63,258 nt of DNA, filler included, from Olpidium bornovanus S191 (GCA_017911155.1; 29 parts of 29 records of this genome joined end to end with filler, not necessarily neighbours in it), one strand, 5' to 3'. Numbered from the whole stretch's first letter, positions 3,297 through 7,420 are shown. Notes: generated by a model from the sequence alone, not told the origin. Translations and numbers: made by a program.

Positions 3297-3429
3297 ATTA
3301 TCATTACTCACTTTTGCCGAGCATTTATTTTTGTCGGAACGTCCGCGTTTACGGCGTTCGAATGGGTGCCGTTCCTTCCCCTTCTCCTCGCGTCCGGCCC
3401 TTTCATAAAGCAGCACGCCGGGCGCGTTT

Positions 3430-3462
<33 letters not shown>

Positions 3463-3481
3463 GTTGTTTTTTTTTTTTTAA

Positions 3482-3581
3482 NNNNNNNNNNNNNNNNNNN
3501 NNNNNNNNNNNNNNNNNNNNNNNNNTTAATTAATTAANNNNNNNNNNNNNNNNNNNNNNNNNNNNNNNNNNNNNNNNNNNN
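3482..3581. other. Artificial contig spacer N44-TTAATTAATTAA-N44 (first of 28)
   Basis: Identical 100-nt spacers start at 3482, 5708, 7421, 11252, 12597, 15603, 17448, 19626, 21420, 22744, 27498, 29886, 31944, 34893, 36375, 37912, 39031, 40901, 42179, 43291, 44562, 45791, 47478, 49359, 50926, 55150, 59497 and 61685. TTAATTAATTAA puts a stop in all six frames. Confidence 0.99.
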
Positions 3582-4507
3582 AAGGGTAAAACCACAGCAC
3601 CTCAAACGCGTCGAGTGAGGTTTGCGCTGGCGGAGTTGACAAGTCAACGGACCGGTGGTTGCTAATGACGCGTTCAGTTGCGGAATTCGCCGCCGCCGCA
3701 TGTTTTGTTTTTTTTGCAATTTTGCCTCAGTGCGGGATCAGCCACCCGCAACCACTACTACTGGCTTGCGGCGGGCGGAGGGGGGGGGTGTGCCAAGATC
3801 ATGGCTGTTAGGTAACTTCCAGTGGGGCGGGGAATTCGGTGAGGTCTTTTCTCCGCCCGGCGAGGTCTGTTCCTCCCGGGACCCATGAAGCCCGCATTTC
3901 GTCGGGACGCGCTTCGGATGTCGCGTTTCCTGCGGGTTTTCCTCGTCGACAGGCCGCCGTCGTGTCGTCGCTGTGGTTGCTTCTCCGAATTTCAAAAATA
4001 ATAATCATAATAATCATAATAATAATAATAATAAAGTCGAGAAAAAAAACGGAATTTTTCTTTTCCTGTAGAATGACGCTGACGGCAAGAGGTGACGGCA
4101 TGTGCAGGAAGGGATTACAGTTTAGGTCGGGATAAGAGAAAGACGTGCGTGAGAGACGCACGAGGGAACGAGGGAGAGAGAGAGAGAAAAAGAAGAGAGA
4201 GAGAGAGAGAACGAGAAAAAGAGAGAGAAAGAGAGAGATAGAGAGAGATAGAGATAGAGAGCAAAAAGCTCCTTTCTCTCCGTTTCTTTCCTCATTCTCC
4301 TCCTCTTCTTTCTCCTTCTCCTCCTCCTCTTCTTTCCTCCTCCTTCTCCTCCGGTGCACCGGCCCCCTGCGGGCAAACAAGAAAAAGGATCTCAGATTAC
4401 TCTCCCCCCGCCCCACCCCCTTTCCCGAACGCGCCCGGGAAACGCGTGGTCCCCCTGACCGGCCCACGGCCCCCGACGCCCTCGGTCTTCTCACACGTCA
4501 CACGGCA

Positions 4508-5707: not shown

Positions 5708-5884
5708 NNNNNNNNNNNNNNNNNNNNNNNNNNNNNNNNNNNNNNNNNNNNTTAATTAATTAANNNNNNNNNNNNNNNNNNNNNNNNNNNNNNNNNNNNN
5801 NNNNNNNAAAAAAAAAAAAAAAAGAGAGCGGGGGCACAGAAAAAAAAAGAGAGAGGGAGGGAGAGAGAGGGAGAGAGGGAGAGA

Positions 5885-5926
<42 letters not shown>

Positions 5927-6019
5927 GAGAGAAAGAGAGAGCAAAACCCGTTTTGATGCGCCCCGCACGGAGCTCCCGTACCACGTTCCGCAAGACACGC
6001 CCACACCGCACCACACACG

Positions 6020-6496
6020 CAAGACATCCAATACGCTGTTGGCGACCACGTCCTCCTTTTCCGCGAAGGCCTCCGGCACGAGGAAAAACTGCTATCCCAA
6101 AAATACGTGGCACCCTATGTTGGGCTTTTTCTTGTCAACGACAAAGACGAAAAGGACAACTACACACTGGCACTTCCTCTGCCCTTCGCCCAGATCCACC
6201 CCGTCTTCCACGTCTCGCTCCTGCGGAAGTATGAGGAACCCGGCAAAGGAAAGAAGGTCAGCCGGCCGCTCTCCGAGAACGACGAGTACGAGGTGGAAGC
6301 GGTAATTGGGAAGCGTATTCGGCGCGCAAAACAACAATACCTCGTCCTTTGGCTTGGCTACGACTGGTCCGAAGCCACCTGGGAGGATGAGGAAAACCTC
6401 ATCAATGACCAAGGCGCCGTCGCTGAATACCTTGACCGCAATCCCGATCAGCTCCTCACCTCAAACAAGCGTCGTCGTCGCCAAGTGCTCAGCTGA
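6020..6496 (+). mobile_element. Ty3/Gypsy chromovirus pol C-terminus (integrase C-terminal domain plus chromodomain)
   Basis: QYAVGDHVLL...KYVAPYVG...IHPVFHVSLLRKY followed by EYEVEAVIGKR...QYLVLWLGYDWSEATWEDEENL. The frame is intact from about 6020 to TGA 6496; upstream is (GA)n, so the element is truncated. Confidence 0.92.
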
Positions 6497-7420
6497 TTCC
6501 ACGACGCCCGAGGCTTCGCCCTTGTCATCACCCAAGAGCTCAGAGTGCCTGAGAACGTCTTCAGCGCCTCCAGGCTCAGAGCGCCGAAGACCCGGCGCAG
6601 GTCCGAAACCTCTGGTCGTCACAAACGACCAAAGACGCCGCGGAGTCGCGTGAGCCATCGTCAGGCGGCCCTCATGGCCCTCCGGGAGGTCCATTACGGC
6701 CGTCCCATGCGGTTCTTGTTTGCAAAGAAGAACAGGAGGTTGTCCTCCAGCTTGAAGAACACGCCGCGGGCCGGCAAGACAAATTCGCCTCCAGAAATGC
6801 CTGGCTCCTCCATGCAGAAAGCCAGGCACAGGTGATTGGCGTCACGATCGACGTGCATGCGGGGCTTGAGAACGACGAACAGCAGAGCTTTCGTCAGCCC
6901 CCGCGATCAAAGCGTCGCTAAACTTCACGACATCCTGCGAAGCAGCTCGCTTCATTCCAGCGAACGCGCTGCTGTGCTCAGTGCAGAGACTCGATGAAAA
7001 CCGAATCAAAAACTTGAGGTGTAGTCGCAGATCCCAGTCCACGAAACTGGTCGTTGCTGTCCTGGCCTGGCCGCGCTCGCGTTCGCTTCCCAGGAACGTA
7101 GCGATTTCAGCCTTAGGAACTGGCTGTCGAACCACGAATGTATGCACTGCGCGTTCTGTGATGTTCAAGATTTGTTTAAGGAAGGCATTCCTCTTGTCGT
7201 TTGGCATGCCTTGTGGCAGGCGTGGTGGGTGCCCAGGAGGCGGCGGTGAGACATTCAGGCCTTGTCGACGTTGCTGACAACTTTGCGGCGCACGGGCTGC
7301 AGCACAGTTAATGCAGATATTGCATACCGCAGCGGTCAAGTTCAAGGAACAAGATTCGGTTGGCGGATAATTCCCACTGATGAGCACGGACCTTTCCTCT
7401 TGGTGCCGACTTTGCCTGGG
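6461..7420 (-). pseudogene. Frameshifted 2OG-Fe(II) dioxygenase, TET/JBP-like, 5' partial
   Basis: Joining frames across 1-nt shifts at about 6900 (C5 run on +) and about 6710 gives ...FSDALIAG/LTKALLFVVLKPRMHVDRDANHLCLAFCMEEPGISGGEFVLPARGVFFKLEDNLLFFFANKN/HGTAVMDLPEGHEGRLTMAH. H-V-D lies at 6855-6847, the distal H at 6709-6707 and R at 6667-6665. Confidence 0.75.

What the first reader, a model, noticed from the sequence alone, without database searches (positions are those of the whole stretch)
6640..6960. Cryptic TET/JBP-like DNA-base dioxygenase hidden by two compensating frameshifts
Seen in sequence: on the minus strand the ORF track shows two unrelated-looking ORFs in one frame (6842..7387 and 6461..6829). 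The 190 nt between about 6900 and 6710, read one base off, give MHVDRDANHLCLAFCMEEPGISGGEFVLPARGVFFKLEDNLLFFFANKN. Returning to the first frame gives HGTAVMDLPEGHEGRLTMAH. That supplies the Fe ligands (HxD and distal H), GGxxxLP, and the 2OG-binding R-x-[ST] in the expected order. Established: this pattern fits the TET/JBP clade; fungal TET/JBP genes are known mainly from basidiomycete transposon-linked expansions, and Coprinopsis TET acts on 5mC and 6mA. Inference: a zoosporic fungus, from a part of the fungal tree where 6mA is abundant, carries a mobile TET/JBP-like family that may edit DNA methylation. This copy is either a pseudogene or has sequencing errors (one shift is in a G5 run).
Basis: partly seen in the sequence, partly recalled or inferred. 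Interest (0 to 1): 0.82.

Follow-up and report, generated by a model that had tools for sequence, protein, structure and literature searches.

The report
Retrotransposon-borne TET-like gene, decayed copy
The window holds a broken last exon of a TET/JBP-like DNA-base dioxygenase gene that sits backwards behind the polymerase gene of a gypsy-type LTR retrotransposon, a carrier that a 2025 survey of fungal transposons looked for and did not find.

Summary
The downstream frameshift is real: the window has one base fewer than every relative between 6715 and 6714.

The upstream "frameshift" is not real. In relatives, PRMH.D is the start of exon 2, directly after a 3' splice site (window AG 6866-6865). 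Homology to the closest paralogue stops at 6923, inside that intron. The 192-codon ORF further upstream is unrelated to the family's exon 1.

The gene is a two-exon protein of about 320 aa. Both exons align in the same order with a bona fide phage Tet_JBP family. Its only solved-structure match is the algal TET homologue CMD1. Only TET-type Pfam models are hit, all below threshold.

In every copy with readable or gene-called flanks except L006, the gene lies tail-to-tail with the integrase-chromodomain end of a Ty3/gypsy chromovirus pol, with overlapping stop codons. These include three decayed Olpidium-type copies (the window among them) and L008, which has an unbroken gag and pol.

The window copy is a dead fragment. 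It has no exon 1, one frameshift and a truncated pol.

Verdict: TET-like is supported and mobile is supported, but the carrier is an LTR retrotransposon, not a DNA transposon. Not shown: a high-confidence fold, LTRs flanking the gene, or any activity.

The parts
6716..6864 (-). It starts PRMHVDRD. Fe ligands: H at 6855-6853 and D at 6849-6847. GGEFVLP lies at 6792-6772.
   Evidence: Translation. It is 88% identical to Olpidium P0001 and 69% to P0002. It aligns with CMD1 H345/D347 and the identical GGEFVLP.
6714..6715 (-). Frameshift site. The window has one base fewer than L001 and L002 here. The exact position is ambiguous by a base or two within AAG/AAC.
   Evidence: Pairwise DNA alignment. 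All relatives read through in one frame.
6461..6715 (-). It holds the distal Fe-ligand H at 6709-6707 (HGT), R at 6667-6665 and T at 6661-6659 (R-x-T), an acidic tail, and the stop at 6463-6461. The last 36 nt overlap the end of pol on the other strand.
   Evidence: The distal H aligns with CMD1 H397. The R-x-T and HG columns align with phage Tet_JBP.
6865..6923 (-). Remnant of the 3' part of the gene's only intron, including the AG acceptor at 6866-6865 and an 11-nt extra stretch (6877-6867) absent from L001. Homology to the paralogue ends at 6923.
   Evidence: In L001 the exon 1 end (..VHNDQ) is followed by GTGAG...TGTTAG and then PRMH in phase. L008 shows the same with GT...TTTTGTAG. The intronless L006 reads NYQPKTHQD across the junction.
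6924..7420 (-). Unrelated upstream sequence. It carries most of a 192-codon open frame (7420-6845) that runs off the edge of the piece. It is not exon 1 of the TET-like gene and its origin is unknown.
   Evidence: No DNA or protein similarity to any related locus. No Pfam, PDB or protein-database hit.
5990..6496 (+). 3' end of a Ty3/gypsy chromovirus pol. It comprises the integrase C-terminal SH3 (6116-6232), the chromodomain (6287-6439) and the stop at 6494-6496. It is cut off upstream near 5990.
   Evidence: Pfam PF24626 at E 3.2e-08 and PF00385 at E 2.6e-16. It is 76% identical to the L001 pol end and 54% to the unbroken L004 pol.
5848..5941 (.). (AG)n microsatellite. Together with an A-rich run at the left edge of the piece, it stands where the rest of pol should be.

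Best explanation
The window is a decayed fragment of a Ty3/gypsy chromovirus that carries an accessory gene in the opposite orientation, directly behind pol. That gene encodes a TET/JBP-like Fe(II) dioxygenase of about 320 aa.

Gene model, pieced together from relatives: exon 1 is about 186 aa. A single phase-0 intron follows. Exon 2 is about 134 aa and starts P-R-M-H-x-D. Its stop codon overlaps the pol stop.

The window keeps only the last part of the intron and exon 2, with a one-base shortfall at 6715/6714, plus the SH3-chromodomain end of pol. Exon 1 is replaced by unrelated DNA from 6924 on.

Inferred mechanism:
- The element is transcribed in the pol sense, so the antisense intron is not spliced out of the genomic RNA and is copied along with it.
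- The dioxygenase is made from an antisense, spliced transcript.
- It acts on a methylated base in DNA, most likely 5mC and possibly 6mA or T, so as to counter methylation-based silencing of the element. This is what has been proposed for TET genes carried by fungal DNA transposons.

Shown here: homology, frame, selection, gene structure and linkage to pol. Inferred: that the gene lies inside the LTRs, that it is expressed, and its substrate and biological role.
For: (1) Homologues and frame. The frame-B piece finds P0001 (E 9.5e-23) and P0002 (E 3.5e-17) of Olpidium bornovanus, and five more distant clusters. All relatives read HxD...GGxF.LP...HGT...R.T.A in one frame.

(2) Purifying selection in that frame. 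Ka/Ks is 0.13-0.38, and third-position changes dominate.

(3) TET/JBP type.
- The only PDB hit is the TET homologue CMD1: E 0.17 with the window piece alone and E 0.001 with the family profile. It aligns D349/D350 through H397.
- Pfam hits only PF20515 Tet-like (5 of 7 copies, best E 1.4e-4) and PF12851 Tet_JBP (best E 0.057 over). No AlkB or prolyl-hydroxylase model is hit.
- hhalign against 8 phage Tet_JBP proteins (Pfam-checked): exon 2 gives probability 79%, E 1.6e-5, on template 181-240. Exon 1 gives probability 43%, E 2.5e-4, on template 41-155. The two matches are in the same order as the exons.

(4) Gene structure. GT..AG introns are seen in L001 and L008, the same exon 1/exon 2 break with a GT-initial codon after ..YQ in L003, L004 and L011, and an intronless junction in L006.

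(5) Linkage to pol. The tail-to-tail arrangement with the chromodomain end of pol occurs in the window, L001, L002, L003, L004, L005 and L008. The P0004 contig has an overlapping opposite-strand gene, but no DNA was available. Exon 2 protein identity among these copies spans about 33-89%.

(6) Intactness. L004 has an unbroken 910-aa pol ORF. L008 has gag plus a 1173-aa pol, followed by the antisense gene.

(7) Related chromoviruses L009 and L010 hold a different antisense ORF in the same place. In L009 the overlapping contig ends put that place before the next gag start, in the stretch where an LTR would lie; no LTR was delimited there.
Against: - All Pfam scores are below the curated cut-offs (22.4 against 27, and 13.1 against 34.9). 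Only half-domains could be scanned.
- AlphaFold on exon 2 alone gave pLDDT 43-46, so no fold comparison was possible.
- Exon 1 has no Pfam or PDB hit by itself.
- No contig shows both LTRs around pol plus the TET-like gene. L008 ends inside exon 1.
- Some copies lack a catalytic residue. L002 has S for D, L007 has P for the distal H, and P0003 has Q for R.
- Whether the host has DNA methylation was not examined here.
Confidence: 0.72

Rival explanations
1. One reading: one long TET/JBP gene (7387..6461) hidden by two compensating frameshifts, with the upstream 181/192-aa ORF as its N-terminal half.
For: The upstream frame is open for 192 codons up to 6845 and overlaps the frame-B ORF.
Against: Relatives have a different, conserved exon 1 that ends ..PPMW...YQ. 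The upstream ORF shows no similarity to it. DNA homology to the 90.6%-identical paralogue stops at 6923, inside what is intron in L001. The G5 run is unchanged. The upstream ORF has no homologue anywhere that was searched.
Confidence: 0.04
2. The TET-like gene is a host gene, or part of some other repeat, that merely lies next to chromovirus insertions. It is not cargo of the retrotransposon.
For: No contig shows LTRs on both sides. The Olpidium-type copies carry only the SH3-chromodomain end of pol (window and L002; L001 runs off its contig). L006 has a different downstream neighbour.
Against: The junction is the same, with overlapping stop codons, in copies from at least four independent data sets. 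Those copies differ by up to about 60% in protein sequence, and pol and exon 2 diverge together. Independent insertions cannot reproduce that. L008 shows gag, an unbroken pol and the gene in a row.
Confidence: 0.1
3. The protein is a 2OG/Fe(II) or cupin-type double-stranded beta-helix enzyme outside the TET/JBP clade, with a non-DNA substrate.
For: All family-model scores are below threshold. No confident fold was obtained. The aromatic residue six positions after the Arg, which stacks on the base in TET2, NgTet1 and CMD1, is not evident by simple counting.
Against: Every independent search returns only TET-type relatives: CMD1, PF20515, PF12851 and phage Tet_JBP. The catalytic columns are aligned, and both exons match in the same order. 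No AlkB, P4H or JmjC model appeared at E up to 10.
Confidence: 0.12
4. Chance ORFs in GC-rich non-coding DNA, such as the untranslated tail or LTR of the retrotransposon.
For: G+C is 56-67% across 6558-6932, which favours long open frames.
Against: There is cross-sample protein conservation with library-wide E-values down to 5e-8 for copies only 42-58% identical, together with Ka/Ks well below 1.
Confidence: 0.01

Closest known systems
Transposon-borne fungal TET/JBP dioxygenases (AG, PU and PE types on Kyakuja/Dileera/Zisupton, hAT, Harbinger, IS3EU, EnSpm, Plavaka and Helitron elements; Kojima 2025, PMC12730594)
   Same: A TET/JBP-type gene is carried as cargo by a mobile element in a fungus. 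It is multi-copy and many copies are decayed. The proposed role is escape from methylation-based silencing. PF20515, a Pfam Tet-like 2OG-Fe(II) oxygenase family, is the best Pfam hit.
   Different: The carrier is an LTR retrotransposon, a Ty3/gypsy chromovirus. [quoted passage not shown] The gene is antisense to pol, keeps a spliceosomal intron, and its named relatives are in Olpidium rather than Dikarya. Scores against the fungal model stay below its cut-off.
CMD1, the Chlamydomonas reinhardtii TET homologue (PDB 7CY4-7CY8; PMC7854593)
   Same: It is the only solved structure matched by sequence. H345/D347 align with the window's H/D, H397 aligns with the HGT histidine, and the GGEFVLP heptapeptide is identical. 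An Arg follows the distal His at a similar distance.
   Different: CMD1 is a cellular gene of about 540 aa that adds a glyceryl group from vitamin C to 5mC. Its Trp358 blocks 2OG binding. Here the aligned column is A/V, with a conserved W/F one position later, so the co-substrate cannot be read from the sequence.
Phage Tet_JBP proteins next to ParB-like nuclease genes (Rhodococcus phage Tonitrus gp3, mycobacteriophage KayaCho gp2 and others; one is annotated as thymidine hydroxylase)
   Same: Both exons align in the same order with this family by profile-profile comparison. This includes the R.E column of exon 1 (template motif PRKP.MRRE) and the W, GG..P.YG, D, HG and R.S/T columns of exon 2. 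The size is similar, about 290-330 aa.
   Different: They are bacterial-virus genes with only about 18-30% identity over the aligned columns. They have a different genomic partner (ParB and aGPT-Pplase genes) and a presumed thymine substrate.
LTR retrotransposons with an extra antisense ORF between pol and the 3' LTR
   Same: The slot and orientation are the same. The related chromoviruses L009 and L010, found here, carry another conserved antisense ORF there. From my own knowledge, such extra ORFs are described in plant Ty3/gypsy lineages.
   Different: The cargo here is a recognisable DNA-base dioxygenase rather than an ORF of unknown function.

Membership tests
TET/JBP dioxygenases (Pfam PF12851 Tet_JBP; PF20515 Tet-like 2OG-Fe(II) oxygenase) | Fe(II) facial triad H-x-D ... 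H in the right order and spacing | tested here: met
   In the window: H 6855-6853, D 6849-6847 and distal H 6709-6707. H is invariant in 8/8 copies, D is present in 7/8 and the distal H in 7/8. They align with CMD1 H345, D347 and H397.
TET/JBP dioxygenases (Pfam PF12851 Tet_JBP; PF20515 Tet-like 2OG-Fe(II) oxygenase) | Score at or above the curated family threshold | tested here: inconclusive
   The best scores are 22.4 bits against 27 (PF20515) and 13.1 bits against 34.9 (PF12851). Only exon 2, less than half of the domain, could be scanned as one piece. The window pieces alone give no hit. Even the bona fide phage proteins score below PF12851's cut-off.
TET/JBP dioxygenases (Pfam PF12851 Tet_JBP; PF20515 Tet-like 2OG-Fe(II) oxygenase) | Arg after the distal His that binds the C5 carboxylate of 2OG (R-x-S/T) | tested here: met
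   In the window: R 6667-6665 and T 6661-6659, 14 residues after the distal H. R is present in 6/8 copies. It aligns with the R-x-S column of phage Tet_JBP.
TET/JBP dioxygenases (Pfam PF12851 Tet_JBP; PF20515 Tet-like 2OG-Fe(II) oxygenase) | An N-terminal half of the domain that matches the family in order | tested here: inconclusive
   The exon 1 profile against the phage Tet_JBP profile gives probability 43% and E 2.5e-4 over 111 columns, placed just before the exon 2 match. There is no Pfam or PDB hit. The window itself lacks exon 1.
TET/JBP dioxygenases (Pfam PF12851 Tet_JBP; PF20515 Tet-like 2OG-Fe(II) oxygenase) | Double-stranded beta-helix fold resembling TET2, NgTet1 or CMD1 | tested here: inconclusive
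   AlphaFold on exon 2 alone gave pLDDT 42.6 and 45.8. The tools do not accept the spliced full-length product.
TET/JBP dioxygenases (Pfam PF12851 Tet_JBP; PF20515 Tet-like 2OG-Fe(II) oxygenase) | Oxidation or other modification of a methylated base in DNA | not testable with these tools
   This needs a biochemical assay.
Ty3/gypsy chromovirus (LTR retrotransposon) | pol with RT, RNase H and integrase, ending in a chromodomain | tested here: met
   L004 and L008 have RVT_1, RT_RNaseH, Integrase_H2C2, rve, SH3_Tf2-1 and Chromo. The window keeps only SH3_Tf2-1 and Chromo.
Ty3/gypsy chromovirus (LTR retrotransposon) | LTRs with a polypurine tract and a primer-binding site, enclosing the cargo gene | tested here: inconclusive
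   L008 has one 374-nt LTR (3800-4173, TGT..ACA). A purine tract precedes it and TGGTAGC.. follows it, before gag. The contig ends inside exon 1, so no 3' LTR is seen beyond the gene. Nothing of this is present in the window.
   The ungapped alignment puts A/V at Trp358 and a conserved W/F at Phe359. CMD1 has two more residues between HxD and GG, so the register is uncertain.
DNA-transposon-borne fungal TET/JBP (KDZ and others) | Adjacent DDE, HUH or KDZ transposase within terminal inverted repeats | tested here: not met
   No transposase is present in any locus. The neighbour is a retrotransposon pol in the window, L001-L005 and L008.

The most novel reading that the evidence does not exclude
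Intact members of this chromovirus lineage are active retrotransposons that bring their own DNA-base-modifying enzyme. Its closest solved relative is CMD1 rather than a plain 5mC oxidase, so the enzyme may write a hypermodified base (CMD1-like chemistry) on the element's DNA instead of simply demethylating it. That would be a retrotransposon-encoded epigenetic counter-defence of a new kind. The more modest version is the first functional TET/JBP-positive retrotransposon with ordinary TET chemistry. I put that at about 0.45.
Probability: 0.12. Interest if true: 0.9.

Novelty: new variant of a known kind. Interest (0 to 1): 0.68.

Why it matters
TET/JBP genes carried by transposons are thought to let the transposon erase or disguise the methylation mark that silences it. 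Until now they have been reported only on DNA transposons and Helitrons of Dikarya. The most recent survey stresses that no retrotransposon carries one and speculates about why.

A chromovirus lineage with an antisense, intron-bearing TET-like gene would remove that exception. It would extend transposon-borne TETs to Olpidium, reported as the closest living zoosporic relative of the terrestrial fungi. It would also give a compact natural system in which the chromodomain targets the element to silent chromatin while its cargo may undo the silencing mark.

The family is missed by standard Pfam annotation, and NCBI gene models join its exon to antisense pol sequence. Similar cargo may therefore be under-reported.

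Tried and rejected
- Pfam on the three window pieces separately gave no TET hit. This was expected for short pieces.
- The upstream ORF 7420-6845 had no hit in PDB. It had none among 5.8 billion proteins of 105-336 aa. It had no similarity to the exon 1 profile or to any fetched locus. It remains unexplained.
- A search for full-length annotated homologues of 200-637 aa found only the two Olpidium models.
- A JGI metagenome scan with the exon 2 alignment found nothing. The first attempt failed because the alignment had no conserved stretch.
- AlphaFold on exon 2 alone, run twice, gave low confidence. No fold search was run because it would be meaningless.
- Exon 1 against Pfam and PDB gave nothing relevant.
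- The closest other chromoviruses by pol, L009 and L010 (45% and 44% identity to the L004 pol), do not carry the TET-like gene. They carry a different antisense ORF.
- The organisms behind GCA_040384005.1 and the SRR/ERZ samples could not be identified from the literature library.
- The window piece alone against the phage Tet_JBP profile is weak, at E 0.013 and probability 3%.
- The Ka/Ks control in wrong frames and the L003/L004 pair failed for technical reasons.

Full report
**What is in the window**

The piece (5808-7420) was read on both strands. On the minus strand one frame is open from the edge of the piece at 7420 down to 6845. It is open again from 6841 to 6464. The frame one base off is open from 6906 to 6697 and contains the quoted peptide starting MHVDRDANHL.

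On the plus strand, 5990-6496 encodes the C-terminal SH3 domain of a Tf2/Ty3-type integrase followed by a chromodomain (PF24626 at E 3.2e-08; PF00385 at E 2.6e-16). This is the 3' end of a Ty3/gypsy chromovirus pol. It is cut off upstream, where an (AG)n microsatellite (5848-5941) and an A-rich edge stand. The pol stop (6494-6496) and the stop of the minus-strand ORF (6463-6461) overlap tail to tail.

**Is the peptide real?**

An exhaustive HMMER search with the 70-aa frame-B piece against 1.84 billion representative proteins gave eight hits, seven of them relevant. The eighth is an unrelated 1436-aa repeat protein.
- P0001 is 88% identical (E 9.5e-23) and P0002 is 69% identical (E 3.5e-17). 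Both are hypothetical proteins of the Olpidium bornovanus metagenome-derived assembly GCA_017911155.1.
- Five shorter proteins come from ENA and Logan assemblies. They are 42-58% identical, with E from 5e-8 to 8e-5.

In the relatives the frame-B segment continues in the same frame into ..HGTA...R.T.A... The DNA alignment with L001 (90.6% identity over window 6923-6060) shows that the window has one base fewer between 6715 and 6714. L002 shows the same.

Differences between copies fall mainly on third codon positions (26/22/59). Ka/Ks is 0.13 against L002, 0.38 against L001 over the whole exon, and 0.18 over its core. The downstream frameshift is therefore real, and the reading B-then-A is a sequence that evolved as protein.

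**The upstream "frameshift" is an exon boundary**

Homology between the window and L001 begins abruptly at 6923. In L001 a conserved upstream exon ends ..PPLMWTVHNDQ. It is followed by GTGAG...TGTTAG and then, in phase, PRMHVD.

The same exon 1/exon 2 break recurs in L003, L004 and L011 (exon 1 ends ..YQ with a GT-initial codon next), and L008 shows the intron itself, GT...TTTTTTGTAG. L006 has no intron and reads ..NYQPKTHQD.. straight across the junction, which confirms where the splice falls.

In the window the acceptor AG is at 6866-6865. The stretch 6923-6865 is the 3' part of the intron, with 11 extra bases at 6877-6867.

Upstream of 6923 the window has nothing in common with any related locus, at either the DNA or the protein level. 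The 192-aa open frame there has no Pfam, PDB or database relative. So the window copy has lost exon 1. There are not two compensating frameshifts.

**The gene model**

L003 and L011 give the longest exon 1. It has a likely start (MVKRDP..) about 24 residues before the start of L003. That makes about 186 aa for exon 1 and about 134 aa for exon 2, or about 320 aa in all. From my own knowledge, this is about the size of NgTet1 (321 aa).

**Is it TET/JBP?**

Conserved columns are H-x-D, GG-x-F-[VI]-x-P, D-N-x-L-F-[WF]-F, H-G-T and R-x-T-[ML]-A.
- Against all PDB sequences, the window piece alone finds only CMD1, the Chlamydomonas TET homologue (E 0.17). HVD aligns on H345-L-D347, and the GGEFVLP heptapeptide is identical.
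- A profile of seven or eight non-window copies finds only CMD1 at E about 0.001. That alignment runs from D349/D350 to the distal ligand H397 (residue roles from PMC7854593).
- Pfam scans of the individual copies return only two 2OG-oxygenase families, both TET-type. PF20515 is hit by 5 of 7 copies (best E 1.4e-4, 22.4 bits) and PF12851 has best E 0.057. All are below the curated cut-offs, and no AlkB or prolyl-hydroxylase model appears.
- A tblastn against phage genomes gave weak hits. The one with the widest coverage is annotated "Tet-like J-binding protein".
- I collected eight such phage proteins. Most lie next to ParB-like nuclease genes, and two that I scanned hit PF12851 at E 7.7e-8 and 3.2e-5. 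I compared their profile with the family's.
- Exon 2 matches template columns 181-240 (probability 79%, E 1.6e-5). Exon 1 matches columns 41-155 (probability 43%, E 2.5e-4).

The two halves were searched independently and land in the same order on one bona fide Tet_JBP domain. I take TET/JBP-superfamily membership as probable, at about 0.8, but not proven. AlphaFold on exon 2 alone was uninformative (pLDDT 43-46), and the spliced product could not be submitted.

The co-substrate cannot be read from the sequence. The R-x-T is present, but CMD1 also keeps that Arg without using it. The register around CMD1's Trp358 is uncertain by one residue.

**The carrier**

In every copy with readable or gene-called flanks except L006, the gene ends tail-to-tail against the chromodomain end of pol, with overlapping stop codons. 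This holds for the window, L001, L002, L003, L004, L005 and L008. The contig of P0004 has an overlapping opposite-strand gene, but no DNA was available.
- L004 carries an unbroken 910-aa pol ORF with RT, RNase H, integrase, SH3 and chromodomain.
- L008 (GCA_040384005.1, 9.7 kb) shows gag, then a 1173-aa pol, then antisense exon 2, the intron and exon 1 running off the contig.
- The pol end and exon 2 diverge roughly together across copies.
- L008 also has one 374-nt LTR. A purine tract precedes it and a TGGTAGC.. primer-binding site follows it. The 3' LTR beyond the gene is not on the contig.
- The next chromoviruses by pol similarity, L009 and L010, hold a different conserved antisense ORF in the same slot. 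In L009 the overlapping contig ends place that slot before the next gag start, in the stretch where an LTR would lie; no LTR was delimited there.

Taken together, the gene is most likely cargo of the retrotransposon. An intron in an antisense cargo gene is what one expects if the element is copied from its pol-sense RNA.

**State of the copies**

The three Olpidium-type copies are all decayed.
- The window has no exon 1, one frameshift and a truncated pol.
- L001 has a truncated exon 1 and a frameshifted pol.
- L002 has a frameshift in exon 1 and S in place of the D ligand.

The NCBI models P0001 and P0002 join the real exon to antisense pol or to unrelated sequence.

**Comparison with what is known, and novelty**

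Transposon-borne TET/JBP genes are established in Basidiomycota and Pezizomycetes, but only on DNA transposons and Helitrons. [quoted passage not shown]

This family is therefore a new variant of a known kind. The logic is the same, but the carrier is of a new class (an LTR retrotransposon with an antisense, intron-bearing gene). The fungal lineage is new, and the sequences are too divergent for standard annotation. The window itself is only a dead fragment; its value is as a pointer to the family.

**Uncertainties**

Three things are missing: a confident fold, an element with both LTRs around the gene, and any biochemical or expression data. The origin of 6924-7420 is unknown. It could be an insertion into the intron, a rearrangement, or a misassembly of a very fragmented metagenome-derived genome.

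Noticed in passing
window 7420-6845, minus strand: A 192-codon open frame runs off the edge of the piece. It has a CxxCxxC...C cluster and a proline-rich stretch. It has no Pfam, PDB or protein-database relative and no similarity to any related locus. It abuts the intron remnant at 6923, and its origin is unknown.
   Followed up: partly
window 5808-5990: An (AG)n microsatellite (5848-5941) and A/T-rich runs stand where the rest of pol should be. The pol fragment starts only near 5990.
   Followed up: partly
L009 5980-6759 (minus) and L010 6462-7055 (minus): Two chromoviruses, with pol 45% and 44% identical to the L004 pol, carry another antisense ORF (259 and 197 aa, no Pfam hit) in the same slot behind pol. 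By eye the two share motifs such as ..A[LV].PP..R.L.L.RR.. and WLP.D. They are not TET-like.
   Followed up: partly
L008 1-3369 and 4809-8177; 3370-4277: A 3369-nt direct repeat at 100% identity covers part of gag plus most of pol. The first copy breaks off inside integrase and runs into about 430 nt that end in a purine tract and a single LTR (3800-4173). The primer-binding site and gag of the second copy follow. This is either a tandem or internally deleted element, or an assembly artefact. The minus strand of 3370-3790 has an ORF with splice-site-like signals next to the purine tract.
   Followed up: partly
L006 1498-1920 and 1767-2354: This copy lacks the intron (..NYQPKTHQD..) and has a frameshift in exon 1. 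Downstream it is followed by an integrase ORF in the same orientation, not by the usual tail-to-tail pol.
   Followed up: no
L001 860-1627 and L002 1480-4316 (NCBI models KAG5459137.1 and KAG5462590.1): The deposited gene models are chimeras. P0001 joins exon 2 to an antisense translation of the pol SH3-chromodomain region. P0002 joins an unrelated upstream ORF, exon 2 and downstream sequence.
   Followed up: yes
L011 about 378-380: There is an in-frame TAG in exon 1 where the 92%-identical L003 has a Glu residue at the aligned position. Upstream, L011 shows a possible start codon (MVKRDP..).
   Followed up: partly
L012-L019 (phage genomes): The phage Tet_JBP genes next to ParB-like nuclease genes carry varied annotations: queuine tRNA-ribosyltransferase, oxidoreductase, hypothetical protein, thymidine hydroxylase and Tet-like J-binding protein. 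The first of these looks like a mis-annotation.
   Followed up: no
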